Positions 214 to 56,728 of a stretch of DNA of 64,000 nucleotides are shown here, piece after piece; positions within the stretch are counted from its first letter, which is position 1, and every line of letters starts with the position of its first letter. The notes below the pieces were generated by a model that worked only from the letters and a program-made list of their open reading frames with translations, did no database searches and was not told where the DNA came from. The position numbers were made by a program, and so were the translations under genes. The stretch is from Octopus sinensis (Eukaryota), in contig NC_042999.1 in NCBI RefSeq assembly GCF_006345805.1, positions 17,236,001-17,300,000 of the forward strand, read 5' to 3'.

Positions 214-445
214 AAGGCGATGAGCCGGCAGAATCGTTACGTTGCCGGGCGAAATGCTTAGTGGTATTTCGTCTGCCATTACATTCTGAGTTCAAATTCC
301 GCCGAGGTCGACTTTGCCTTTCAACTTTTCGGGGTCGCTTAAATAAGTACCAGTTACGCACTGGGGGTCGATATAATCGACTTAACCCGTCTGTCTGTCT
401 CTGTTTGTCCTCTGCGTTTAGCCCCTTGTGGGTAGTAAAGAAGTA
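214..445 (+). mobile_element. tRNA-derived SINE, family A, full length
   Basis: A-box-like head, B-box GAGTTCAAATTCC and family A body; 16-bp TSD GGTTGTTCTAACGGGA at 198-213 and 446-461. Confidence 0.9.
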
Positions 446-873
446 GGTTGTTCTAACGGGATAGTCTATGTCAATAATTTTGTTTCTCGAATGGCTAAGT
501 ACGAAATCCGTGTTGCAGACCATTACTAGTTTTGTTAGTGAATTTTATTATCGATATCAAAATACATTTTTGTGAGAGATATGACCAGATTTACACTCTA
601 CCCGTTCTAGTCATAGGGTGGTATTATCATTAATAAACTACCTTAGAGTTGTTATTTTTTCTTTTACTTACGCACATGTACCACAACCAGGAGATTGCAG
701 TTAGATTCAATGTATATGGTTAAAACTGGTGGCTTTAAAAGTCATACTTTACATACTTTGGTGTTATGCGTATTTTAACAAAATATCAATCCGTTAGTTA
801 TCAAACTTTACAGTTATAGTAAGCACTTCACTTGCACTTAGACATGTTGAAATAAATGAAAAGATTGCTTCCC

Positions 874-3001: not shown

Positions 3002-3163
3002 ATATACATACATATATATACATATACATACATTCACACTCGTGCATGTACACACACACATACACACATATATACGTATGTGTATATGTCCATAAAAGAA
3101 ATCCTTTTGAGGCTAGATTAGAACTGACCTAGACATGACAAACTGCACAATTTATGTATATAT

Positions 3164-3226
<63 letters not shown>

Positions 3227-3228
<2 letters not shown>

Positions 3229-3453
3229 TTCTTTACTACCCACAAGGGGCTAAACACAGAGGAGACAACAAGGACAGACAAACGGATTAAGTCGATTACA
3301 TCGACCCCAGTGCGCAACTGGTACTTAATTTATCGACCCCGGAAGGATGAAAGGCAAGGTCGACCTCGGCGGAATTTGAACTCGGAACGTAACGGCAGAC
3401 GAAATACGGCAACGCATTTCGCCCGGCGTGCTTAACGTTTCTGCCAGCTCGCC
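3227..3453 (-). mobile_element. SINE family A; its 5' end abuts the palindrome
   Basis: Full A body on the minus strand; the head ends at the palindrome boundary. Confidence 0.9.
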
Positions 3454-3662
3454 GTAACTTTTAACGCACACACAACGCACTTTAGCTAATCCTCGGATTT
3501 AAACCGTTGTATGGAAATGAGTAAATTATTCGGCCCAAGGGTATAGTACAAAAAAATTGCCGAAGGTGCCACGCAGTGGGACTGAACCCGGAACCATGTG
3601 GTTCATAAGCAACATACTTACTACACAGTCACTCTTGCACCTATGGTATATATATATATATA

Positions 3663-3693
<31 letters not shown>

Positions 3694-3773
3694 CGTTTGT
3701 GTGTGTATGTATATATATATATATATACACATATATATATGTACATATATATATATACATACACACACAAACG

Positions 3774-3809
<36 letters not shown>

Positions 3810-4003
3810 CCATAGGTGCAAGAGTGACTGTGTAGTAAGTATGTTGCTTATGAACCACATGGTTCCGGGTTCAGTCCCACTGCGTGGCACCTTCGGCAAT
3901 TTTTTTGTACTATACCCTTGGGCCGAATAATTTACTCATTTCCATACAACGGTTTAAATCCGAGGATTAGCTAAAGTGCGTTGTGTGTGCGTTAAAAGTT
4001 ACG
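3453..4003. repeat. ~550-bp palindrome (fold-back inverted duplication)
   Basis: Outer arms (~3453-3660 and ~3796-4003) are exact reverse complements by eye. The inner microsatellites are also mirrored, centred near TGTACA at 3740-3745. The ORF track shows identical N-termini at 3557(+) and 3899(-). Confidence 0.95.
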
Positions 4004-4115
4004 TCACAAGTATTGTTTAGCTATGAAACATATGTAGTCTTTACGTACCTTTCTCGTTGCTTACATTCTCGTACTATACCCTTAGTAGACGGAAACTGAA
4101 ACAAGCCAGTTGTAT
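3810..4115 (+). mobile_element. SINE-B 5' part interrupted by a ~140-bp piece of another repeat
   Basis: B head, then a foreign segment homologous to 8680-8820, then the B body resumes (AGTAGACGGAAACTGAAA); GTACTATACCCTT at 3907-3919 and 4071-4083. Confidence 0.75.
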
Positions 4116-4160
4116 ATACATATGCATAAATACACACACACACACAGACACACACACACT

Positions 4161-4195
<35 letters not shown>

Positions 4196-4861
4196 TGTAT
4201 GTGTGTTTCTGTGTGTATGTAAGTCTTTAGTCATTAAGAGAAATAATTACTATTAAAGCTTTAGCTAATTCTTGAATTTGAACATATCCGCAGGTTTTTA
4301 CAGAAATTTGCTCGTGTTGACGTTGCTGTTCGCGTTCCATTTCACAATCAGCAAGCATATGTAATAACATGAAGGTGGTAACACCTCAAACTTGAAACCC
4401 AAGCAAATAAATGATTATTTTACTATGGCTGTGTGTGTGATTTCGCATAAATGCATCACTCATAAAGCTTGTCTATTCTAAGCAAAATATAACCTTTTCT
4501 CCTTTCACTGATAGCATTATACGTTTAGTCAGGTATATAGAAATGGATTTATTGAGGTTTCTGAAAAGAATTGCGTGATAAACAAATTCACATATTCAGT
4601 GTTTATCGTCATATTGGCAGCAGTGATTTTTTTTTTTTTTATAATCTAGTCAGAAGGCAAGTGATACGTACGGGTAGGAGAGTAATCAGATTTACATGCA
4701 TACAATGCGTAGCTGGTATTTTATTATATCGACACCGGTAAGAGAGAAGGTGAGCTGACCTTGGAGGAAGCCTCAACTCAAGTCTTAAGCAACTAGGTTA
4801 TATTTCGCAAGGTACTTTTCCCGACGCGTAGCGGTTATGCCAATTCATGACTCTACATACC

Positions 4862-5330
4862 TATTTCTTTACTACCCACAAGAGGCTAAACACAGAGAGG
4901 ACAAACGAATTAAGCTGATATACCGACACCAGTGCGTAACTGGTACATACTTAAGCGACCCCGAAAGGATGAAAGGCAAAGTAGACATCGGCGGAATTTG
5001 AACTCAGAACGTAGCGGTAGACGAAATATTGCTAAGCATGTCGCCCGGCGTGCTAACGATTCTGCCAGCTCGCCGCCTTAAAGACAGAAGAAATACTTAT
5101 TTCTTTACTACCCACAAGGGGCTAAACATCGAGAGGACAAACAAGGACAGACAAACGGATTGAGTCGATTACATCGACTCCAGTGCGTAACTGGTACTTA
5201 ATTTATCGACCCCGAAAGGATGAAAGGCAAAGTCGACCTCGGCGGAATTTGAACTTAGAACGCAACGGTAGACGAAATGCAGTTACGCATTTCGCCTGGC
5301 ATGCAACGTTTCTGCCAGCTCGCCGCCTTC
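4862..5330 (-). mobile_element. Two complete SINE-A units in tandem inside one TSD
   Basis: Two heads and two tails; 16-bp TSD CATGACTCTACATACC at 4846-4861 and 5331-5346. Confidence 0.9.
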
Positions 5331-5700: not shown

Positions 5701-6214
5701 AAAGAAACAATATATAATGCTTATAAAATACTTATGTAATATTGTACTATTTGCTTACAAAATAAATATATGATAGAAAAGAAATTGTCATTTTTTATTA
5801 TTCTCATTATATATATATTGTTTCCCGTATAAATTAATATTTCTAAGCAATATTACCGGTCCCTCGCACATTCGAAAGACAAAAAAACAAAAACAAACAA
5901 AACTAACGGTACCCCACATCCGAGACACACAGACGTGTACACATAAATGTACGTATAAACGATGCGCTCCTTTCAGTTTCCTTTCACTCAGAAAACTTTG
6001 GTTGGCCCCAGGCTGTAGTAGGACTCACTTGGTCACTGTTCCACGGAGTAGGACTTGAAACCAGAACCATGTCGTTGGGAAGCAAGCTTGTAATGTTTAT
6101 AAAAATCCCTCTATAGCCTATTAGTTCTGATTCAACAACAGGTAGAACTATAAAAATGAATAATTAGTCCTCGGAAATGAGAGATGAAGACTGTAGAAAC
6201 AGTTATAAAACAAG

Positions 6215-6590
6215 GCGGCGAGCTGGCAGAATCGTTTGCACGGCGGGCGAAATGCTTAGCGGTATTTCGTCTGCGTTACGTTGTGAGTTCAAATTCCGCC
6301 GAGGTCGACTTTGCCTTTCATCCTTTCGGGGTCGATAAATTAAGTACCAGTCACGCACTGGGGTCGATGTAATCGACTTAATACCTATGTCTGTCCTTGT
6401 TTGTCCCCTCTGTGTTTAGCCCCTTGTGGGTAATAAAGAAATAGGTATTTCGTCTGCCGCTACATTCTGAGTTCAAATTCCGCCGAGGTCGACTTTGCCT
6501 TTCATCCTTTCAGGGTCGATAAATGAAGTACCAGTTACGCACTGGGGTCAATCTAATCGACTTCATCCCTTTGTCAAGTCCGTGTTTATC
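6215..6590 (+). mobile_element. SINE-A with duplicated body
   Basis: Full unit followed by a second unit starting at GTATTTCGTCTGCC. Confidence 0.9.
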
Positions 6591-6765
6591 CTCTAATAAA
6601 CAGTTATAAAAGAGAAAACTTGTTACAAATTAACAAAAAATGTACACTTTAATTTTATGTCACCGAATCTGCTCCTCCTTGAGAATTGAAACAATCTTTT
6701 GGTACTTTTATAGAAATAGATATATGCTAATATAGATTACTATAAGACTGAATATATCATGATGA

Positions 6766-8820: not shown

Positions 8821-9896
8821 ATATATATATGTGTGTGTGTTGTGTTTGTTTGTATGTGTGTGCGTGTATATGCATATATGTATATGTATATGAATAAAGT
8901 TATATAATTGTGCATAATGCAAATTGCACAGCTGTTTCACTACTTGAGTAGAGACTCTTTCGCAGTAAATAGATTGCTAATGAAAAGCTAAAGAAAGCTA
9001 AAATCAACTTGAAATTGTAAGTGAAATATCTTAATTACGTGATGTCGGCATATATAGAGAATAGCTCTTTATATCAAGGCACAAGTAATTTAGTCGACGA
9101 AACGTTTGCTTGCTAAGCTTACTTTGCTTACACAGGTAATGTTAACTGAACATATTTTGCTGAGTGAGTTAGTTTAGCAGCTATCAATCAACTAGATCAC
9201 GTCCTCTCTAGAAGAAACTAAAACACATTTAATTCAAACTCTTTAACAATTTCAACATCATATTAACTATTTTAATAAAAATGACAAGAACATAGCTGCA
9301 AGAACGGAATAAATAGACGCAGCTGCAGTTACTTATATGTAAACAGCAACAGCTTATGCCACACACATAAAGCCATCACATTCGTTAAAAGTTTTTAAAA
9401 AATGTAACTTGAAACAAACAAAATTATTATTTTTTCGTCTGAACACATTGAGTTAACTAACAGCCAATCAACTGAAAACTTAAGCAAATAAAAATAAACT
9501 ACGTTAGCGAGAAAAAAATAGCATTTAAGAAGAAGTGTAGTTTGGTCGAGAATAGGTTGAAAGTAAGTTTGAGAAAGTCGTGTTAAAAAATATTAAATTA
9601 ATAACAGAAAAAGTTTGTTTGGGAAAAATGAACCATGATGAAATTTCGTTTATTAATAGTTTACACTGTTGCTGGTTCAGACCTTGCTAGAGCAAAGCAA
9701 GAAACACGTATGGAAAAAATGAAGTGCTTGTGTAATGTTGTAGGTTAATTTGAACCGTTATACGAGACCATAGAATTCGTAACCTACATTAATAAGTGAT
9801 GCAACAGGTTCAGAATGCAATGTTTTAAGTGATAACAAGACAGCAGGGCTGAATAAAGACAGCCGCCATGGCGAGACATTATTTATAATTACTAAG

Positions 9897-10445
9897 GTTA
9901 GCACGCCGGGCGAAGTGCTTAGCGGTATCTCGTCTGAGTTCAAATTCCGTCGTGGTCGACTTTGCTTTCATACTTTGGGGGTCGATACATTAAGTACAGT
10001 TATGCACTGAAGTCGATGTAATCGACGTAATCCCTTTGTCTGTTCTTTGTCCCCTCTATAAGAAACGTTAGCACGCCGAACGAAATGCTTAGGTATTTTG
10101 CCTGCCGTTACGCTCTGAGTCCAAATCCCGCTGAAGACGACTTTGCCTTTCATTCTTTCGGGGTGGATAAATTAAGTACCAGTTACGCACTGGGGTCGAT
10201 ATAATCGACTTAATCCGTTTGTCTGTCCTTGTTTGTCCTCTCTGTGTTTAGCCCCTTGTGGGTAGTAACGAAATAGGTATTTCGTCTGCCGTTACGGTCT
10301 GAGTTCAAATTCCGCCGAGGTCGACTTTGCCTTTCATCCTCTAGGGATTCGATAAATTCAATACCAGTTGCGTACAGGGGTCGACCTAATCGACTGGCCC
10401 CACCTTTCCAAACATTTCGGGCCTTGTGCCTAGAGAAGAACGGAT
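9897..10445 (+). mobile_element. Cluster of 3-4 partial and complete SINE-A units
   Basis: Repeated GAGTTCAAATTCC/GTCGACTTTGCCTTTCAT blocks. Confidence 0.85.
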
Positions 10446-11150: not shown

Positions 11151-11708
11151 TTTCTATTGAATAGAAAACGTATGTGTCTAAGAGTGCATGCAACTTTGAA
11201 AGTCACCACTACCAGCACCACCAGCACCATCACCAGCATCATCATCATCATCATCATCATCATCATACTACTTTTTACGATTTTTTTTATTAGTACTGTA
11301 TTTTTTTACTTTCATTTGCAAACAATGGGCATTGTGCAGTTTGGACTTTATTGTCATTAAGTATAGAGAAATGACTATCTTTTTAGCATTTATTTTATTT
11401 AAAGAATAATAGTTCGCTTCTAATAATCTAATATGGTTTCCTTTGGAGAAGGGTGAAATGTATTTGTAACAAACAACGCATATCAGATAAAATACACGAG
11501 TAGTATCACACACCTGAAAATAAAACATTGGCACAAAAATCTGTCATAAGTAGAAATGAATGACAAATAATTATTTACACCTGATCAAGTGAAAAATACT
11601 ACGATATAACAGCGTTGCAATAACATCTGCAACAGTTTTGCTACAGTGGTTGATCAGAAAGATGCGCAGGTGAAGGCGCGTATCTTACTGGTTAAGGTAT
11701 TCAGTTCA

Positions 11709-11826
11709 GTTTACGGCCATATCACGTTCAAAGCACCGGTTCTAGTCCGATCACCGAAGTTAAGCAACGTCGAGCCTAGTTTGTACTTAGATAGGTGACC
11801 GCTTGGGAAACCTAGGTGCAGTAAGC
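11709..11826 (+). rRNA. 5S rRNA-derived copy 1 (pseudogene or SINE head), 118 nt
   Basis: GTTTACGGCCATATCACG...CCGATCACCGAAGTTAAGCAACGTCG...GGTGACCGCTTGGG...GTGCAGTAAGC; the ends can pair as helix I; no T-run terminator follows. Confidence 0.9.
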
Positions 11827-11840
11827 GTCACACATTGTTA

Positions 11841-12256
11841 AGGCGGCAAGCTGGCAGAAACGTTAGCACGCCGGGCGAAATGCTTAGCGGTATTTCGTCT
11901 GCCGTTACGTTCTGAGTTCAAATTCCGCCGAGGTCGACTTTGCCTTTCATCCTTTCGGGGTCGATAAATTAAGTACCAGTTACGTACTGGGTCGATATAA
12001 TCGACTTAATACCTATGTCTGTCCATGTTTGTCCCCTCTATGTTTAGCCCCTTGTGGGTAATAAAGAAATAGGTATTTCGTCCGCTGTTACGTTCTGAGT
12101 TCAAATTCCGCCGAGGTCGACTTTGCCTTTCATCCTTTCAGGATCGATTAAATAAGTACCAGTTACGCACTGGGGTCGATATAATCAACTTAATCCGTTT
12201 GTCTGTCCTTGTTTGTCCTCTCTGTGTTTAGCCTTTGTGGGCAATAAAGAAATAGG
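11841..12256 (+). mobile_element. SINE-A with duplicated body, fused downstream of 5S copy 1
   Basis: Standard A head 14 nt after the 5S end. Confidence 0.9.
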
Positions 12257-13304
12257 TCAAGGTATTCAGTTCACGATCTTAAGGTCTTCCATACTTGACG
12301 GTTTGTTGTATCTTTGAGAAAGAGGCTTTATTTCACGTTATTACTGTCCAATCAATCGGTAAAAAACGTGTAGTAACTCTATTTGAAAAATCCAGCTTTA
12401 TCACATTCTGTGTCATGCCAAATAGCACTAAAAACTACATTAAGGTTACATGTCTGTGGTGTGCTCAGCCACTGGCGCCTTAATGCCATGAGTGGGATGT
12501 TCCGTTGATTGGGTCGTGTCACGTTAGATTCCAAACCACACACGTGGTTATTCAACTTAGTGGCTTTACTTTTGCACATGTTCTGTTTAGCACAATGATA
12601 TTTAAAAACACCTTCACATAGCCAGATGCAGCCCTTTTTCTCCACTGCACGCCTGAATTCCAGATATGAAATTTTCAGCGTTTGTAAAGAATGTATACAT
12701 TCCTGTTGGAACCTTATAAATAATATATATAAGAAACACCATACAGCACCAATATAGTTATTAAACAGTATAAGGTAAGATGGTAGAAAGTGGTCCGAAA
12801 ATCAAAGAACATCGATATGATTTAGAATTAACGAAGCAGGCCCCCAAAATGTGGGTAATCGGAATCCTCCGTAGCACACAAACTGCATGTCGACGATTAG
12901 ATCTATCTGTTGCAAGTATTAGGAGTGGAATTCTTCCAATAGTATTGAGTTTACTAATAAAACAAGTATTTCGGCTGCTCCTTATTGAATTCCTTTTCCA
13001 TTCGTTTATTTAGATTATAAATGAAAGTACACACACACACACATACGCACACAAACACACAAACACACACACGCACACACATAAACACACACTTACATAC
13101 TCGCGCACGTGTATGGAGAATATTTTATCCTTTTCTCCGTTAATTTTATTTGCGTTAAGAATATTTTAAGCAGTTAATATATTGCATAACATTTTTGCCT
13201 CAGTCGTTGATTTTATGAAACTGCCTGTGCATTTCCACTCATCTTGTCATCGCTTAGTAATATCTCGTTATATTTCTAGTGAGTCATTGTGTCTTACTAG
13301 TAAA

Positions 13305-27445: not shown

Positions 27446-27677
27446 TGGCGGCGAGCTGGCAGAAACGTTAGCACGCCGGGTGAAATGCGTAGCCGTATTT
27501 CGTCTGCCGTTACGTTCTGAGTTCAAATTCCGCCGAGGTCGACTTTGCCTTTCATCCTTTCGGGGTCGATAAATTAAGTACCAGTTTCGCACTGGGGTCG
27601 ATGTAATAGACTTAATATCTTTGCCTGTCCTTATTTTTCCCCTCTAAGTTTAGCCCCTTGTGGGCAGTAAAGAAATA
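27446..27677 (+). mobile_element. SINE-A, full length, young
   Basis: 16-bp TSD TATACTTATTTCGTGT at 27428-27443 and 27678-27693. Confidence 0.95.
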
Positions 27678-28279
27678 TATACTTATTTCGTGTAGATAAA
27701 ATTAGTATCTGTCAAGTATTGAGGTTGGCAAAATCTATGATAGTCAACATTATAATATGTAACCTTTTCTTAACTAAAAAATCAATAAATTGTTTATATG
27801 CACTCTAACTTATTGATATACATTCTTCGACATCCACACAAAACGTGACAAAAAGGATGAATATAAGTCATGTATTAAAACGTGACTGTGAAGCTGTAGT
27901 CATGGTTACCCAAAGATGAGAAAACACTCCTGTCCTTGTATAGTTCTATATCCTTATTCACCTATTTTCTACTTGTCGCAAACATTTTTATTTACATGAA
28001 TGAATTTTTCATGTTATCATTTCCGCAGTAAATTCAGGATTTTATAAAATACTTTGAGCTACACAACATGATGTACTTAGTCAGTTATGAATATGAAATA
28101 TGTAACCATTATACATTATGCATACGCACATAAAATACATAGACAGACATGTACACACACACGCGCGCACACACACATATACACTTTCATGCATATATTT
28201 TTGATTTTGATTTGATTTTTCCAGTTTCAGCTCATGAGCTGTGGCCATGCTGGGGCACCGCCATTAAACAATGTGCTAT

Positions 28280-28391
28280 GCTTACTGCACCTAGGTTTCC
28301 CAAGCGGTCACCCATCTAAGTACTGACCAGGCTCGACGTTGCTTAACTTCGGTGATCAGACAAGAACCGGTGATTTCAATGTGATATGGCC

Positions 28392-28397
<6 letters not shown>
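28280..28397 (-). rRNA. 5S rRNA-derived copy 2 (head of a SINE3-like element spanning 28197-28397)
   Basis: Reverse complement is a 118-nt 5S sequence (first 3 nt replaced by a TA run), followed by an 18-nt linker and the LINE-type tail. Confidence 0.9.
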
Positions 28398-28453
<56 letters not shown>

Positions 28454-28646
28454 GTGTATGTATGTATGTATACATACATACAGGTTTGCCTAAAATTAAA
28501 CCGTCAGTAAATGAAAATTCCATAACTACTTAATATTCAATTCTATCTATTCATTCCAATTATGAATATTTAATAATTGAATGTTCAGTGTTAAAATCAT
28601 CGTTTTTCGTTTTCAACATCTGTCTATTAATTAGCGCAGTCTCAGT

Positions 28647-28760
28647 GGAGGAACGTGGCCTAGTGGTTAGAGCAGCGGACTCGCGGTTAAGGGAGCACGG
28701 GTTCGAATCTCAGACCGAGCGACGTGAGTGTTTATGAGCGAAAAACCTAAGCTCCATGCA
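28647..28760 (+). mobile_element. SINE family D 5' fragment (tRNA head)
   Basis: TGGCCTAGTGG A-box and GGGTTCGAATCTC B-box; homologous to 56400-56510(-). Confidence 0.8.
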
Positions 28761-28769
28761 AAAATGAAG

Positions 28770-28983
28770 GGCGGCTAGTTGGCAGAATCTATAGCACGCC
28801 GGGCAAAATGCTTAGCGATAAGTCGTCTGCAGCTACGTTCTGAGTTCAAATTCCGTCGAGGATGACTTTCCCTTTCATCCTTTCGGGGTCGGTTACGCAC
28901 TGGGGTCGATGTAATCGACTTTATCCCTTTGTCCTTGTTTGTTTCCTCTATGTTTAGCCCCCTGTGGGCAATAAAGAAATAAA
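28770..28983 (+). mobile_element. SINE-A, diverged
   Basis: A-type head, B-box and tail. Confidence 0.85.
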
Positions 28984-30018: not shown

Positions 30019-30442
30019 GTTCATAAGGCTGGTTTCCCCTTCTCGGCTGACTGGACCCCGGATTACACATTTTTGTCATCTGGGGGGGGGGAGTATAAGG
30101 ACAAGAAATGAACACAACGCATCATTGTAATTAGGAATCGAAACCACAATATTGCGATCTTGTGTGCAAAGGCAGCGAGCTGGCGGAAACGTTAGCATGA
30201 TTGGCGAAATGCATAGCCGTATTTCGTCTGCCGTTACGTTCTGAGTTCAAATTCCACCGGGGCCGACTTTGCCTTTCATCCTTTCGGGGTCGATAAATTA
30301 AGTACCAGTTACGCACTGGGGTCGATGGAATCGACTTAATCCCTTTGTCTGTCCTTGTTTGTCCCCTCTGTGTTTAGCCCCCTGTGGGTAATAAAGAAAT
30401 AGATCTTGTGTGCACCATGCTAACCACTAAGCCGCACACCTC
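30019..30442 (-). mobile_element. SINE family E split by a SINE-A insertion
   Basis: B-box at 30134-30145 and A-box at 30423-30433 are separated by the insert. Confidence 0.7.
30169..30401 (+). mobile_element. SINE-A nested in the SINE-E head
   Basis: 13-bp TSD GATCTTGTGTGCA at 30156-30168 and 30402-30414. Confidence 0.95.
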
Positions 30443-30710: not shown

Positions 30711-31109
30711 GGATTGTGGACACCTCTCTCAAAATGCTTCCTCCTCTTAAATTACTGAGTTTAAATTCCGCCGAGGTCGACTTTGCCGTTCATTCTCATG
30801 CGCATCGCTAAAACAAATAGCAATTGAACATCTGTCGATGTAAATCGAGTTTACGACTACTTTGAAATTACTGACCTTGTTCCACAATTGGAAATCATTG
30901 TTCTTTTCAACCATACGAAGTGCATTGAAGCAGATTATTAATTTATACTGGGCATTGATTTTTAAACTAAAAATGGCAATATCACCATACGCCCGACTTG
31001 TACTTCTCAATTTGCAGCATTTCATTGTGGTCGACAAAAAGTACTTTATGATTTTCTGTCCTCAATCTCACTTGTCCTCAATCTCACTGCTGTCCCCAGT
31101 TGCATATAT

Positions 31110-31327
31110 ATTTCTTTACTACCCACAAGGGGCTAAACATAGAGGGGACAAACAAAGTGATTAAGTCGATTACATCGACCCAGTGCGAAACTGGTACTTT
31201 ATTTATCGACCCCGAGAGGATGAAAGGCAAAGTCGTCCTCGGCGGAATTTGAACTCAGAACGCAACGACAGACGAAATACCGCTAAGCATTTCGCCCGGC
31301 GTGCTAACGTTTCTGCCAGCTCGCCAC
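31110..31327 (-). mobile_element. SINE-A, full length
   Basis: Reverse-complement A copy. Confidence 0.9.
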
Positions 31328-31583
31328 CTTTTCATATAGTTTATTGTATGAGCTTACCCCTGAAAATGCTGTACAGGTGCACTTTATATAAATCCTATAC
31401 CGCCACCTGGTATAAAGTAAAGGGCTGTGACATATTGGTTAGGGTGTTGCACTCATTATCGTAAGATTGTGGCTTCCATTCCTTGACTGAACAATGCGTT
31501 GCTCCACTCCACTAACCTGGCACCAAGGAGTAATCATGCGACAAGCCGGCGTCCCACCCAGCGAGTAATATATATGCCAGAAA

Positions 31584-31813
31584 GGCGGCGAGCTGGCAGA
31601 AACGTTAGCACGCCGGGCGAAATGCTTAGCGGTATTTCGTCTGCGTTACGTTGTGAGTTCAAATTCCGCCGAGGTCGAGTTTGCCTTTCATCCTTTCGGG
31701 GTCGATAAATTAAGTACCAGTTACGCACTGGGGTCGATGTAATCGACTTAATACCTATGTCTGTCCTTGTTTGTCCCCTCTGTGTTTGGCCCCTTGTGGG
31801 TAGTAAAGAAATA
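31584..31813 (+). mobile_element. SINE-A nested in the 3' part of an older E-type SINE (~31425-31885)
   Basis: 15-bp TSD TATATATGCCAGAAA at 31569-31583 and 31816-31830. Confidence 0.95.
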
Positions 31814-32295
31814 AGTATATATGCCAGAAAAATCAGAAACCAGAAAACCGACCTCATGAGTCTATATGACTTGAGAAGTCGCATCTAGTATTGGATCAAA
31901 CAAATCAGATCAGTTTTCGATATTTGTCTTGTAACTTGAAACGCAACACTTACGTCAGACTTCGGTATTTGTCTTTGAATTGTGTAACCTTATTTTGATA
32001 ATTAACAGGTCGTTAGTTTATGAATGTTCGTAGTAGTAAAGTTCTGTTTAGGGAGCAAGATATTTCTGGCTCGCAAACACGTCACGAATCCTGTTTTATA
32101 GCCTTGGTAAAATATTTAATTATGTAACAAATGGGAATTGCGTTCATATTTAGATTCAAGGGCTGTTCTGCAAAATTTAATATTCATTATTCATCCCTGA
32201 CAAACTGCTTTGTTATGAAATGGAAGCTACTGAAATGTAAATAATGAACCCTCTGCAAAAATAAGGAATACAGTTCATAAAAAATATATAATAAA

Positions 32296-32541
32296 TGTTC
32301 CTTCACGAGCCATGCCAGCCTCATAAGGGGCGGTTTCCCGGTTTCGGTGGCGTAGAAATTCCCCACCTGGACGGGACGCCGGTCCTTCGCAGAATTACTC
32401 ATTTTTGCCGGATGAGTGAACTGGAGCAACGTGAAATAAAGTGTTTTGCTCAAGAATACAACGCATCGTCCGGTCCAGGAATCGAAACCACGACCTTACG
32501 ATCATGAATTCAACACCCTAACCACTAAGCCACGCGTCTCT
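32296..32541 (-). mobile_element. SINE family E, full length
   Basis: tRNA head, central TTGAGCAAAACACTTTATTTCACGTTGCTCCAG block shared with family C, tail shared with family D. Confidence 0.85.
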
Positions 32542-33849
32542 ACACAATACAGTTTGCTATAGATTGAAATATAACAACGGATATACACATATATACGTAC
32601 TTACGCACGAATACATGGAAAAGAATGCTGCGTGGCCTACGGGTTACGTTGTCGCTCTCACTATCGAAAGTTGTGGTTCGATTCCCGGACCGGGAGCAAA
32701 ACACTTCATTTCACTTTGCGCAGTCCACTTAGTTGTAAATGGATAACCCTGCAACGAAATAGCTTTCTAAGCCAGGGAGAATGTTGGCCTCTTCGTCTAG
32801 CTATTAGAGTGGTATCGTTCAAAAGCTGAATCTACGCAAAGTGCATAGTGGCCTGGAATGTTTAACAAACTGCGATATTCTGGTTGGTACCATGATATCA
32901 GTATCTAACTATTTAGCAAGCTAAAGAGCGAACCTATCGTTATTTCTTCTGAGAGATAATAGCTTATAAAAGAGATTTTACACCTATCGAAATGTTGCCA
33001 AGTCTTTCCAATGTATCTTTTTGAAATATTTCTTATCACCAATAAACAATGGTATTGTCTCATTCATTTAGAGAAGGTATAATATACTGTTATTTAAAAT
33101 GAATATATTTCTCTGAAATTCATTATATACTAACAATTGGATATTTACACTTGACAAAACATATTGTAGTATTGACGTATGACATCAAGTATTAAAACGT
33201 TGTGAAAATACACAAACACACACATACATGTATGTATATTATTGTGTCCACTTATTTCAAAACAAATATATAAATTCGGAGGTAAAATATTTCATGCGTT
33301 TTTCACTTGGAATCGCAAATAGTTATTCTATTTTTGTCATAACACAATGCTATTTTAAAATATTTTCTAATCTCTGAAACGTTTTAACACTCAGCAATAT
33401 TCCAATCATATCGCTTACTTTGCAGTTATCACAAACTAAATTTGTTTACGGGAAATTGCAAATAAGTAGAAAGTGCTGAAATTTTGCATATATCAATAGA
33501 CGATATTGTATATATTATACGTATACAATGATGCATAAAATGCTAGTAATTGTTGTATTTCCCGGAAAGAGAGAGCATGAAAATTAATAATATAACAATA
33601 GGAAAATACGAGAATTTAACAAAAGACACTTGTAATTTGCCCGCAATTTGCCACTAGAATTTGATTTGTAATAGCAGTAAAATCAATTATTGTCGCTTTT
33701 CTGACGGGCGATTCGATTTATATTTGTAGCTTAATACAAAACACTTCTCAAAGGAAATATGCAAAATGGAAATTTTCAGGACGAAATGTTATTGTGTTTA
33801 GCGAAAAAATAACGAAGAAATAAAGATTATTGAATTGTTCTTTCAGCTG

Positions 33850-35940: not shown

Positions 35941-36394
35941 TTTATTCTTGTATTCGTTTCAGTCATTTTGAACGCGGTCATGCTGGAGCACCGCCTTTAG
36001 TCGAGCAAATCGACCCCAGGCCTTATTCTTTGGAAGCCTAGTACTTATTCTATCGGTCTGTTATACCGATCCACTAAGTTACGGGGATGTAAGCACACCA
36101 GCATCGATGTCAAGCGATGGGACACACACACACATACGTACAAAGATACATACATACATACATACAAAAATACATACATACATACATATATATATATATA
36201 TTATATATATATATATATACACACATACATATGACGGGCTTCTTTCAGTTCCCGTCTACCAAATCGACTCACAAGGCTTTGGTCGGCCCGAGGCTATCGT
36301 AGAAGACACTTTCCCAAAATTCCACGCTGTGGGACTGAACGTGGAACCATGTGGCTAGTTAGTACTTACTTACCACGCAGTCACTCCTGCACCT
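35941..36394 (-). mobile_element. SINE-B, full length, 11 nt downstream of 5S copy 3
   Basis: Complete B on the minus strand. Confidence 0.9.
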
Positions 36395-36405
36395 ATAAAT
36401 GGATT

Positions 36406-36523
36406 GCTTGCAGCACCTAGGTTTCCCAAGCGGTCACCCATCTAAGCACTAACTAGGCTCGACGTTGCTTAACTTCGGTGATCGGACGAGAACCGGTACA
36501 TTCAACGAGAGATGGCCGAAAAG
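36406..36523 (-). rRNA. 5S rRNA-derived copy 3, 118 nt
   Basis: Reverse complement matches copies 1 and 2 (CCGATCACCGAAGTTAAGCAACGTCGAGCCTAG...GGGAAACCTAGGTGCTGCAAGC); no T-run terminator follows. Confidence 0.9.
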
Positions 36524-39332: not shown

Positions 39333-39913
39333 GGCGGCGAGATGGTAGAATTGTTATCGCGTCAGACAAATTGCTTTGCTGCATTAAAAGACCCCCTTCG
39401 GTCATGAATGACCATGGGATTGCACCTAGAAAGTTACCCTCCTAGACACAAGTCCGGGCAAGGTTGTTTATGGAAGACCAGCAGTCGCCCATGCATACCA
39501 GCCTCCCCTCTCCACGCCACCAGCGTTATCCAAGGGAAAGACAAAGGTCGATACAGCTTGGCACCTGTGACGTCGCAACTCATTTCTACAGCTGAGTGAA
39601 CTGGAGCAACGTGAAATAAAGTGCTTTGCTCAAGAACACAACACGCAGCCCGGACCGGGATTCGAGCTCACAACCTCACGATCGTAAGCTCGACGGTCTA
39701 ACCACTGAGCCATGCGCCTTCACATTGCTGCATTAGATCCTGCTTTACGCAATGAATTCAAACTCCGCCGGGGTCGCTTTAGCATTATTCCTTTCGGTGG
39801 CGTGAGGTGTGGGTCTGTAAAATAAGCTCCAGTCAGGTACTGAAATGAAAGCAATCGCCTATCCCTCCCCTCAAAATTCCAGGTGTTTTGCCTATAATAG
39901 AAATAATTATTAT
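39333..39913 (+). mobile_element. Old SINE-A variant interrupted by SINE-C
   Basis: Own 13-bp TSD TTCCATGTTTTAA at 39320-39332 and 39914-39926. Confidence 0.8.
39387..39723 (-). mobile_element. tRNA-derived SINE family C, full length
   Basis: Head GTGAAGGCGCATGGCTCAGTGG; 11-bp TSD TTGCTGCATTA at 39376-39386 and 39725-39735. Confidence 0.9.
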
Positions 39914-39954: not shown

Positions 39955-40396
39955 AATCTTTTCTACTCCATGCACAAGGCCCGAAATTTTGGGGGGATGG
40001 AGCCAGTCGATTAGATCGACCCCAGTATGCAACTGTTACTTTATTTATCGACCCCGAAAGGATGAAAGGTCAAGTTGACCTCGGCGGAATTTGAACTCAG
40101 AACGTAAAGGCAAACGAAATACCTATTTCTTTACTAACCACAAGGGGCTAAACACAGAGAGGACAAACAAGGAGAGACAAACGGATTAAGTCGATTATAT
40201 CGACCCCAGTGCGTAACAGGTTCTTATTGGTAAAGCGATCCCGGCGGCGTTTGAATTTCGCAGAGGTCGGAATTGCCTTTCATCCCCCGAAATGATGAAA
40301 GTCAAAGTCGACCTCTGCGGGATTTGAACTCAGAACATAACGGCAGACGAAATACCGCTAAACATTTCGCCCAGCGCGCTAACGTTTCTGCCAAGT
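39955..40396 (-). mobile_element. SINE-A multi-unit copy
   Basis: Repeated A blocks on the minus strand. Confidence 0.85.
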
Positions 40397-45085: not shown

Positions 45086-45464
45086 TCAAAGTTACTCCCA
45101 CCGCAGAACGGGGCGCCGCTGCGTGGTGCCAAGGATTCCAACATCACCACAAAATACAGGTCCAGATACTGCAACAGCTTGGGTTTCAGAGGACCACAGC
45201 TCTTTAACATCCTCCCAAATGCCTGAGAGACTTACATGTGTGGTGTGGTTTCTTTAAAACTAACTGGATCTCTTCTTGTTGGGAGTCCCAGATGAACCTA
45301 CTCACGACAGGAGACACGGATGCGGGCAGCAGAATCGAACTCCCTTGTTGATCAAGTGCCACGTATCAGAGGTGGATTCACAAACTAGTGTAGCTCATTC
45401 AGCGGTGGTGCCCCAGCATGGCCGCGGCCTTCGGGCTAAAACATTTTTAAGGATTTAAGGATTT
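45086..45464 (+). mobile_element. 5'-truncated CR1/L2-group LINE: ORF2 C-terminus, 3' UTR and (AAGGATTT)n-like tail
   Basis: Frameshifted translation YCNSLGFRGPQLFNILP...CLRDLH...FFKT...LDLFLLGVPDEP...RAAESNSLVDQVPRIRGGFTN* (stop at 45386-45388); inserted in (TA)n. Confidence 0.85.
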
Positions 45465-56018: not shown

Positions 56019-56259
56019 ATATATATGCATGTATACCAACATACGTACACTCACATGCGTTCCTATAGAAAAATATAATGATAAAAATTTAAAGCTCATA
56101 GATTTATGCAACTTCTTTGGTTTTCAGTATACATACCTATGCATACATATATCTAAAACTATAATTCTATGTGCCGATTGTATTCTAAATCAAAATTTGG
56201 TTGCGTATTCATATGTGTTTCACTTAGAATAACAGTAGTGCATCAGTATATAGCATAAT

Positions 56260-56728
56260 TCGTATTCGGTTCGATATGTGTTCCCCCCAGCTGGAGGGGA
56301 CGCCAGGTCATCGCAGCGTTACTCAAGAAACAGGAAGAGAGAGTGAGAGAAATTTGTGGCGAAGGAGCACAACAAGGGTCGCCACCATCCCCTGCCGGAG
56401 CGTCGTGGAGCTTTGGATGTTTCCGCTCAATAAACACACACAACTCCCGGTCTGCGAATCGAAACCGCGATCCTCCGACAGCAAGACCGCTGCCTTAACC
56501 ACTGGGCCATTTTAAAGCCAAGCCAGACTCATGGGCCCGGTTTCCCGGTTTCAATGGCGTATGTGTTCCCCAGCTGGACGGGATGCCAGTCCATTGCAGC
56601 GTTACTAATCGCAACGAGAAATGAAGTGTTTTGCTCAAGAACACAACGCGTCGACCGGTCTAGGAATCGAAACCACAATCTTACGATCATGATGCTGACA
56701 CTTTAACCACTATACCACGCGCCTCCAC
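56260..56728 (-). mobile_element. SINE-E (56511-56728) + SINE-D (56260-56510) composite
   Basis: Two different tRNA heads in tandem; 12-bp TSD ATATAGCATAAT at 56248-56259 and 56729-56740. Confidence 0.85.

What the first reader, a model, noticed from the sequence alone, without database searches (positions are those of the whole stretch)
28197..28397. SINE3-like element: 5S head + short linker + LINE-derived 3' tail
Seen on the minus strand: 118-nt 5S with A- and C-box regions retained and no T-run terminator, then ATAGCACATTGTTTAAT, then GGCGGTGCCCCAGCATGGCCACAGCTCATGAGCTGAAAC and an (AAAATC)-like repeat tail. The tail matches the 3' UTR end of the LINE at 45404-45442. Known: 5S-derived SINEs (SINE3) use the type-1 internal promoter and a partner LINE tail, and are much rarer than tRNA SINEs. 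Inference: a compact ~200-nt cephalopod 5S-SINE mobilised by the CR1/L2-group LINE. I do not recall it being described but could not check.
Basis: partly seen in the sequence, partly recalled or inferred. Interest (0 to 1): 0.8.

Follow-up and report, generated by a model that had tools for sequence, protein, structure and literature searches.

The report
Octopus 5S-headed retroposon with LINE tail
A roughly 200-base decayed mobile-element copy in an octopus genome joins a complete 5S ribosomal RNA sequence to the last ~70 bases of a CR1/L2-type LINE; this is a known kind of element (a 5S-derived SINE), and whether this compact version ever multiplied as a family could not be tested here.

Summary
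Window 28397-28197 (minus strand) holds four parts in order:
- a full-length 5S rRNA sequence (Rfam 88.5 bits, E 1e-17) with the internal promoter region intact and no T-run;
- a 14-nt linker;
- a 43-nt two-hairpin tail;
- (AAATC)-type end repeats.

The tail is LINE-derived. The same variant ends a CR1/L2-type LINE 3' UTR in O. vulgaris (L004) and occurs as bare ~62-nt stubs, one 98% identical to E1's tail. The abundant tRNA-type SINE uses a different variant.

The junction is unlikely to be chance. The window has two more 5S heads. Each is followed by a related short linker ending in T2-3 and then the exact 5' end of a different SINE. One of these (11709-12254) is flanked by a 19-nt target-site duplication around the whole composite.

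The best reading is a SINE3-type composite made when a LINE reverse transcriptase jumped from a LINE or SINE RNA onto a 5S transcript. The composite then inserted as one unit.

Family status is not shown. No second copy, and no other 5S head, was found in 307 kb of O. vulgaris, O. sinensis and O. bimaculoides DNA. E1's own flanks are microsatellites.

Novelty is limited. A 2026 O. vulgaris repeat annotation already lists four "5S" SINE families (9.8 Mb), though it does not describe them.

The parts
28280..28397 (-). E1 head: full-length 5S rRNA-derived sequence with the A box, intermediate element and C box region intact. The first 4-5 nt merge into the upstream (TA)n run.
   Evidence: Rfam RF00001, 88.5 bits, E 1.3e-17. 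Alignment with the two other heads.
28266..28279 (-). E1 linker ATAGCACATTGTTT. It is homologous to the E3 linker GTCACACATTGTT and ends in TTT. It may be the 3' trailer of a Pol III 5S precursor (inference).
28223..28265 (-). E1 tail AATGGCGGTGCCCCAGCATGGCCACAGCTCATGAGCTGAAAC. This is the LINE-type 3' module with two hairpins.
   Evidence: Same variant at a LINE 3' UTR end (L004:4305-4345) and in bare stubs (L006 98% identical; L001). Fold. Covariation.
28197..28222 (-). E1 terminal short repeats, GGAAAAATC AAATC AAAATC AAAAAT.
   Evidence: The L006 stub has the same repeats.
28398..28446 (.). (TA)n microsatellite abutting the 5' end of E1. Together with the (TG)n-rich 3' flank it hides any TSD.
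11690..12273 (+). Sibling E3. TSD at 11690-11708, 5S at 11709-11827, linker to 11839, type B tRNA-like SINE at 11840-12254, TSD at 12255-12273.
35950..36523 (-). Sibling E2. 5S at 36523-36405, linker AATCCATTT, then a full-length type A SINE down to 35950 carrying the SINE-type tail.
45086..45464 (+). 5'-truncated CR1/L2-type LINE fragment: decayed ORF2 C-terminus, 3' UTR, related tail at 45404-45442 and (AAGGATTT)2.

Best explanation
E1 is a dead copy (about 5% diverged) of a composite non-autonomous retroposon with SINE3 architecture: a 5S rRNA head plus the 3' recognition module of a CR1/L2-type LINE.

Origin (inferred): during target-primed reverse transcription, the LINE reverse transcriptase copied the last ~70 nt of a LINE RNA (the end repeats and two hairpins). 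It then jumped to the 3' end of a Pol III 5S transcript that still carried a ~14-nt trailer ending in UUU, and copied it to nucleotide +1. The chimeric cDNA inserted as one unit.

Activity (inferred from how other SINE3 elements work): such a composite has what a SINE needs. The 5S internal promoter can drive Pol III transcription through the tail to the first downstream T-run, and the tail lets the LINE machinery recognise the RNA.

The same process capped a type A and a type B SINE with 5S elsewhere in this window.

Open question: whether this E1 copy is the primary product of such a jump or a daughter of an amplifying master. I rate the two about equally likely.
For: Shown:
- A full-length 5S head with the promoter region intact.
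- The tail is the LINE-type variant, not the type A SINE variant.
- A LINE copy with RVT_1, YADD and a CR1/L2-type C-terminus ends in this tail.
- The tail folds into two hairpins in all variants. Hairpin 2 is kept by compensatory changes: 2 pairs changed on both sides, 93% of cells paired, against 20-40% in slid controls.
- Bare 62-65-nt stubs of the same tail start within 1-5 nt of E1's junction (L006, L001/L003). This suggests a preferred stop or jump point there.
- All three 5S heads in the window are followed by a 9-14-nt linker ending in T2-3, then the exact 5' end of another LINE-dependent module. These are the type B start AAGGCGGC and the type A start ATAGG.
- The E1 and E3 linkers are homologous.
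- E3 is flanked by an 18/19 TSD abutting 5S position +1 and the SINE end.

Literature:
- The template-switch origin of 5S+tRNA SINE heads is the published model of Nishihara 2006 and Buzdin 2003, as cited in PMC4824008 and PMC4758252.
- Four '5S' SINE families are annotated in O. vulgaris.
Against: - E1 has no readable TSD, because its flanks are (TA)n and (TG)n.
- Its first 4-5 nt cannot be told apart from the microsatellite.
- No second copy of the architecture was found in 64 kb plus 307 kb.
- The 3' flank of genuine octopus 5S genes could not be obtained, so reading the linker as a precursor trailer is untested.
- E1 and E3 share a helix-I change (GCAGTAAGC, which gives a G.A mismatch; E2 has GCTGCAAGC). 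This could instead point to a shared non-functional master.
- The LINE clade is assigned from C-terminal motifs and tail type, not from a phylogeny.
Confidence: 0.7

Rival explanations
1. E1 is one copy of an amplified, compact 5S-SINE family. A master element with exactly this 5S-linker-tail structure is transcribed by Pol III and mobilised many times by the CR1/L2-type LINE. This differs from the best explanation only on whether this copy is a daughter of a master.
For: - The promoter region is intact and the tail module is complete.
- Four '5S' SINE families (9.83 Mb) are annotated in O. vulgaris, and three architectures are seen in this window.
- The three heads are about equidistant from each other at 88-91% identity, as expected for copies of masters of similar age.
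Against: - No second copy with this junction was found in the window, in 307 kb of octopus loci, or in 400 kb of stored O. vulgaris transcript text.
- The sample is too small to exclude a family of up to tens of thousands of copies.
Confidence: 0.45
2. The junction is a chance juxtaposition. A 5S retropseudogene, or a truncated 5S-type B element, and an independent 5'-truncated LINE stub landed next to each other.
For: - Bare LINE stubs of the same length exist on their own.
- E1 lacks a demonstrable TSD.
- The region is dense in repeats.
Against: - It would need an insertion within a few bases of the end of the linker and in the same orientation.
- The same head-linker-module arrangement occurs at all three 5S heads in the window.
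- One of them has a TSD spanning the whole composite.
Confidence: 0.07
3. The 5S sequence is a functional or orphon 5S rRNA gene, and the downstream sequence is incidental.
For: The Rfam score is high and the internal control region is intact.
Against: - There is no T-run terminator for about 130 nt beyond the 5S end.
- Several helix mismatches are flagged in the Rfam alignment.
- The copy is solitary and not in a tandem array.
- The sibling E3 is flanked by a TSD, which marks a retrocopy.
Confidence: 0.02

Closest known systems
SINE3 / 5S rRNA-derived SINEs: zebrafish SINE3 (Kapitonov & Jurka 2003), AmnSINE1 and other 5S-Deu-L2 SINEs (Nishihara 2006), lepidopteran HaSE3 and its relatives
   Same: A 5S head that supplies a type-1 internal Pol III promoter, and a 3' tail taken from a CR1/L2-type LINE. 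The sibling E2 (5S + tRNA-type SINE + L2-like tail) repeats the 5S+tRNA composite head that the template-switch model was proposed for.
   Different: E1 has no body or central (Deu) domain at all. It keeps the whole 5S sequence plus a 14-nt trailer-like linker. A multi-copy family has not been demonstrated. It is a mollusc element, and the 2024 review table of 5S-promoter SINEs lists none from molluscs.
Fruit-bat MEG-RS / MEG-RL and springhare 5S SINEs (Gogolevsky 2009; listed in PMC10946416)
   Same: Short, simple 5S-headed SINEs, showing that compact 5S SINEs arise repeatedly and independently.
   Different: From my own knowledge, those depend on L1 and have A-rich tails. E1 carries a stringent-type hairpin tail with short repeats.
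Chimeric retrocopies made by LINE RT template switching: U6-, U3-, 5S- and 7SL-L1 chimeras (Buzdin et al. 2002/2003)
   Same: A full-length small Pol III RNA at the 5' end, a 5'-truncated LINE or SINE 3' end in the same orientation at the 3' end, and a TSD around the whole chimera (shown for E3).
   Different: The enzyme is a CR1/L2-type LINE rather than L1. A 9-14-nt trailer sits between the small RNA and its partner. The products carry an internal promoter plus a recognition tail, so they could propagate.
The '5S' SINE families of the O. vulgaris repeat annotation (Bonar et al. 2026, PMC13282606)
   Same: The same genus or a close relative: type A and type B SINEs are 81-95% identical between the window and O. 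vulgaris. The class label is the same.
   Different: Only counts are published (4 families, 9.83 Mb), with no sequences or structures in the text held. Identity with E1, E2 or E3 could not be checked.

Membership tests
SINE3 (5S rRNA-derived SINE) | 5' head derived from 5S rRNA that retains the type-1 internal promoter (A box, IE, C box) | tested here: met
   Rfam 88.5 bits, model 1-120. The promoter positions are identical among the three heads or canonical, with CCTGGT in E1.
SINE3 (5S rRNA-derived SINE) | 3' tail shared with a partner LINE | tested here: met
   The E1-type tail ends the 3' UTR of a LINE copy carrying RVT_1 and a CR1/L2-type C-terminus (L004). A related tail sits on the window's LINE fragment. 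The hairpins are conserved.
SINE3 (5S rRNA-derived SINE) | Dispersed multi-copy family sharing the same head-tail junction | tested here: inconclusive
   No second copy in the 64-kb window, in 307 kb of octopus loci or in 400 kb of transcript text. No whole genome was searchable.
SINE3 (5S rRNA-derived SINE) | Each copy flanked by its own target-site duplication | tested here: inconclusive
   E1 lies between (TA)n and (TG)n, and only a low-complexity ATATAT match is found. The sibling E3 has an 18/19 TSD.
SINE3 (5S rRNA-derived SINE) | Transcription by RNA polymerase III from the internal promoter | not testable with these tools
   Only the promoter sequence can be judged. The first T4 terminator lies about 60 nt downstream.
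5S-Deu-L2 SINEs (AmnSINE1 / zebrafish SINE3 in the strict sense) | Central Deu domain between head and tail | tested here: not met
   E1 has only a 14-nt linker between the 5S head and the tail. Whether the type A body of E2 is a Deu domain was not tested; that is my recollection only.
Template-switch chimeric retrocopies (Buzdin type) | Full-length small RNA at the 5' end, joined in the same orientation to the 3' end of a LINE or SINE | tested here: met
   E1 is 5S plus the last ~69 nt of a LINE. E2 and E3 are 5S plus full-length SINEs.
Template-switch chimeric retrocopies (Buzdin type) | One TSD flanking the whole chimera | tested here: inconclusive
   Met for E3. Not readable for E1 or E2.

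The most novel reading that the evidence does not exclude
Octopus genomes may show SINE birth in progress. On this reading, CR1/L2-type (and other) LINE reverse transcriptases repeatedly jump end-to-end from SINE or LINE RNAs onto unprocessed Pol III 5S precursors, meaning 5S plus its short U-ended trailer. The result would be a series of independent 5S-capped composites: 5S-LINE tail, 5S-type A and 5S-type B. Some of these would become the '5S' SINE families, and they would converge on the vertebrate 5S-tRNA-L2 design.
Probability: 0.35. Interest if true: 0.55.

Novelty: new member of a known kind. Interest (0 to 1): 0.35.

Why it matters
5S-derived SINEs are rare compared with tRNA SINEs, and their origin by template switching onto 5S RNA has mostly been inferred from old, reshaped families.

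Here three young composites share one head and trailer but have three different partners, and one has an intact TSD. They show the proposed intermediate state directly. A genome-wide census in octopus could measure how often such jumps happen and which products go on to amplify.

For genome annotation, the result is practical: 5S hits in octopus assemblies should not be counted as rRNA genes.

The element itself is an ordinary decayed repeat with no sign of host function.

Tried and rejected
Getting more DNA of this genome. These attempts failed:
- Protein search with a type B SINE-derived ORF.
- Protein search with the window's LINE C-terminus.
- Exhaustive HMMER search with the 46-aa LINE piece.
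- Exact scans of metagenome, viral and prokaryote-genome contigs with a 5S 23-mer and a type B 25-mer.
- String searches of the stored O. vulgaris transcriptome and RepeatMasker supplements. One search gave only a chance 12-mer hit.

What worked:
- I then did exact look-ups of proteins translated from the transcriptome supplement.
- This gave 11 loci totalling 307 kb.
- The COX11-like ORF was not in the collection.

Other negative results:
- ARAGORN finds no tRNA in the SINE heads.
- No ORF of 100 aa or more lies upstream of 45.4 kb on the + strand, so there is no intact LINE in the window.
- A TSD around only the SINE part of E2 is not convincing.
- An authentic cephalopod 5S rRNA sequence (PMC326244) and Albertin 2015 (PMC4795812) are not held.
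- One literature search was wasted on over-broad terms.

Considered and rejected:
- E1 as a real 5S gene.
- E1's tail as borrowed from the type A SINE. The variant differs.

Full report
**What is there.** Read on the minus strand, window 28397-28197 contains a full-length 5S rRNA sequence: Rfam RF00001, 88.5 bits against a gathering score of 38, E 1.3e-17, model positions 1-120. It is followed by:
- ATAGCACATTGTTT;
- AATGGCGGTGCCCCAGCATGGCCACAGCTCATGAGCTGAAAC;
- GGAAAAATCAAATCAAAATCAAAAAT.

There is no T4 run inside the unit. The first one lies about 60 nt beyond its 3' end. The stretch covering the A box, intermediate element and C box is identical to the other 5S copies in the window or canonical, with CCTGGT in E1. 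The one caveat is that the first 4-5 nt of the 5S head cannot be separated from an upstream (TA)n run.

**The window holds three such heads.** Rfam reports two more full-length 5S matches: 11709-11827(+) at 90.8 bits and 36523-36405(-) at 93.7 bits. I call the three elements E1 (the finding), E3 and E2. None has a T-run terminator. Each is followed, after 9-14 nt, by the start of a different LINE-dependent module.
- **E3** continues into an abundant tRNA-like SINE that I call type B. Standalone copies in the window begin exactly at AAGGCGGCGAGC, which is where the E3 linker ends.
- **E2** continues into a full-length ~450-nt SINE that I call type A. It has a tRNA-like head, an internal microsatellite, and the tail GGCGGTGCTCCAGCATGGCCGCAGTCAAATGACTGAAAC.
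- **E1 and E3** share the head and a homologous linker (ATAGCACATTGTTT and GTCACACATTGTT). They are 90.6% identical over 128 nt and diverge right after that.
- **E2's linker** (AATCCATTT) keeps CATT..T.

All three linkers end in T2-3.

**At least one composite inserted as a unit.** E3 is flanked by GGTTAAGGTATTCAGTTCA (11690-11708) and GGTCAAGGTATTCAGTTCA (12255-12273). The first abuts 5S position +1 and the second abuts the end of the SINE. This is a target-site duplication around the whole 5S + SINE composite. E1 and E2 have no convincing TSD, and E1 sits between (TA)n and (TG)n tracts.

**The tail is LINE-derived.** The 'LINE at 45404-45442' is a ~380-nt 5'-truncated fragment. It has a decayed ORF2 C-terminus (...SLGFRGPQLFNILPNA*...LDLFLLGVPDEP) and a related tail. 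The 17-nt core is identical to E1's, but the second hairpin and the end repeats differ.

To test the inference I needed more of the genome. Several routes failed; they are listed under what was tried and rejected. Exact look-ups of O. vulgaris proteins then gave 11 loci, 307 kb in all, from O. vulgaris, O. sinensis and O. bimaculoides. These loci carry the same type A and type B SINEs at 81-92% identity, so the window comes from this group of octopuses.

In L004 a 5'-truncated LINE (about 3100-4380) shows:
- an RVT_1 domain (Pfam E 4e-11) and a YADD box;
- the C-terminus RLKRLRLYSLEHRRERYAIIYIWKIL...DSLGFRGPQLFNILPKNLRDL...FKMKLDLFLSGVPDEP;
- a 3' UTR ending in AATGGTAGTGCCCCAGCATGGCCACAGCTTGTGAGCTGAAAC followed by short repeats.

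This is E1's tail variant. All type A SINE tails instead read GTGCTCC...CAGTCAAATGACTG, so E1's tail comes from the LINE rather than from that SINE.

I assign the LINE to the CR1/L2 group from its C-terminal motifs and its hairpin-plus-repeat tail. That rests on my knowledge of these clades, not on a phylogeny.

**Tail structure.** The E1, LINE and type A tails all fold into the same two hairpins. On 14 tails, hairpin 2 has two pairs changed on both sides (U-A to C-G, and C-G to U-A). In all, 93% of cells are paired, against 20-40% when the partners are slid. These changes probably reflect only one or two evolutionary events. Hairpin 1 hardly varies, so it gives no evidence either way.

**Bare stubs.**
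- L006:6716-6777 is a 62-nt copy 98% identical to E1's tail, including the AAATC-type repeats. It starts at GCGGTGCCCC and is preceded by A19.
- L001:7267-7330, and its O. sinensis orthologue L003:7037-7088, is another stub starting 5 nt further in. It is absent from O. bimaculoides L002.

The LINE therefore often leaves products that end just 5' of hairpin 1. That is the point where E1 switches to linker and 5S.

**Mechanism.**

*Shown:* the anatomy; the LINE origin of the tail; the recurrence of head + linker + module; unit insertion of E3.

*Inferred:*
- The reverse transcriptase began on a LINE RNA (for E1) or a SINE RNA (for E2 and E3).
- It jumped onto the 3' end of a 5S transcript. For E2 and E3 the jump came at the 5' end of the SINE template. 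For E1 it came after the hairpin module.
- The acceptor still carried a short U-ended trailer.

This is the model proposed for 5S+tRNA SINE heads and for U6/5S-L1 chimeras (Nishihara 2006 and Buzdin 2003, as cited in PMC4824008 and PMC4758252). Reading the linker as a precursor trailer rests on two things: the T2-3 endings, and the fact that the linker ends exactly where each partner begins. Genuine 5S gene flanks could not be examined.

An alternative is that E1 and E3 descend from a shared 5S-SINE master. They share a helix-I change, GCAGTAAGC, where E2 has GCTGCAAGC. Otherwise the three heads are about equidistant at 88-91% identity.

**Family status.** No further 5S head was found:
- none in the 307 kb of loci (Rfam on 214.5 kb, L001-L004, L006 and L008-L010; BLAST on all 307 kb);
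- none in 400 kb of stored O. vulgaris transcript text.

This is compatible with the published coverage of '5S' SINEs in O. vulgaris: 9.83 Mb, 0.35% of the genome, in 4 families. By my rough estimate the sample would be expected to hold only one or two copies. The result therefore neither proves nor excludes an E1-type family. The window itself is about six-fold enriched, with three heads within 25 kb, and I cannot explain that.

**Novelty.**
- 5S-derived SINEs are known from fishes, mammals, insects and fungi.
- A 2024 review table lists none from molluscs.
- I found no paper describing a cephalopod 5S SINE.
- Bonar et al. 2026 list '5S' SINE families in O. vulgaris in their tables, without describing them.

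The finding is thus a new, still uncharacterised member of a known kind. Its most interesting aspect is the set of three different 5S-capped composites, which looks like repeated SINE birth.

**Verdict.** Interest is 0.35.

Noticed in passing
window 11690-12273 (+): E3: a 5S head, a 13-nt linker and a type B SINE with an internal partial duplication, flanked by a 19-nt TSD with 1 mismatch. This is the cleanest evidence that 5S-capped composites retrotranspose as units.
   Followed up: yes
window 35950-36523 (-): E2: a 5S head, a 9-nt linker and a full-length type A SINE with an L2-like tail. The layout (5S + tRNA-type SINE + L2-type tail) recalls vertebrate 5S-Deu-L2 SINEs. Whether the type A body is a Deu domain was not tested.
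   Followed up: partly
window 11.7-36.5 kb compared with loci L001-L011: Three 5S heads lie within 25 kb here. None was found in 307 kb of other octopus loci or in 400 kb of transcript text. This is a local enrichment of about six-fold over the published genome coverage, and it is unexplained.
   Followed up: partly
L006:6697-6777; L001:7267-7330 (= L003:7037-7088): Bare 62-65-nt stubs of the LINE tail start almost where E1's tail starts. The L006 stub is preceded by A19, so it might be a jump onto a polyadenylated RNA. The L001/L003 stub is shared by O. vulgaris and O. sinensis but absent in O. bimaculoides.
   Followed up: partly
window 214-448, 2188-2356, 3226-3454, 4857-5329, 6212-6594, 9894-10395, 27447-27677, 28770-28981, 30169-30402, 31109-31330, 31582-31818, 40005-40393: At least a dozen copies of the type B SINE, some with an internal duplication, plus six type A copies at 2.5-3.0, 25.5-25.9, 36.0-36.4, 36.9-37.3, 42.4-42.8 and 43.8-44.2 kb. 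The window is dominated by SINEs and by TA/TG microsatellites. No credible gene was seen.
   Followed up: partly
window 28640-28700, 32190-32830, 39408-39667, 56228-56703: Further tRNA-like or SINE-like sequences of other families. Examples are GGCCTAGTGGTTAGAGCAGCGGACTCGCGG on the complementary strand at 28.65 kb, and repeated '...GFDS.TG.C...'-type spurious ORFs. They were not classified.
   Followed up: no
L005:4423-5052 (-): An annotated 209-aa gene with an integrase core (rve) domain lies beside the THAP-domain gene in O. sinensis. No such gene call appears in the O. vulgaris orthologous locus L006.
   Followed up: no
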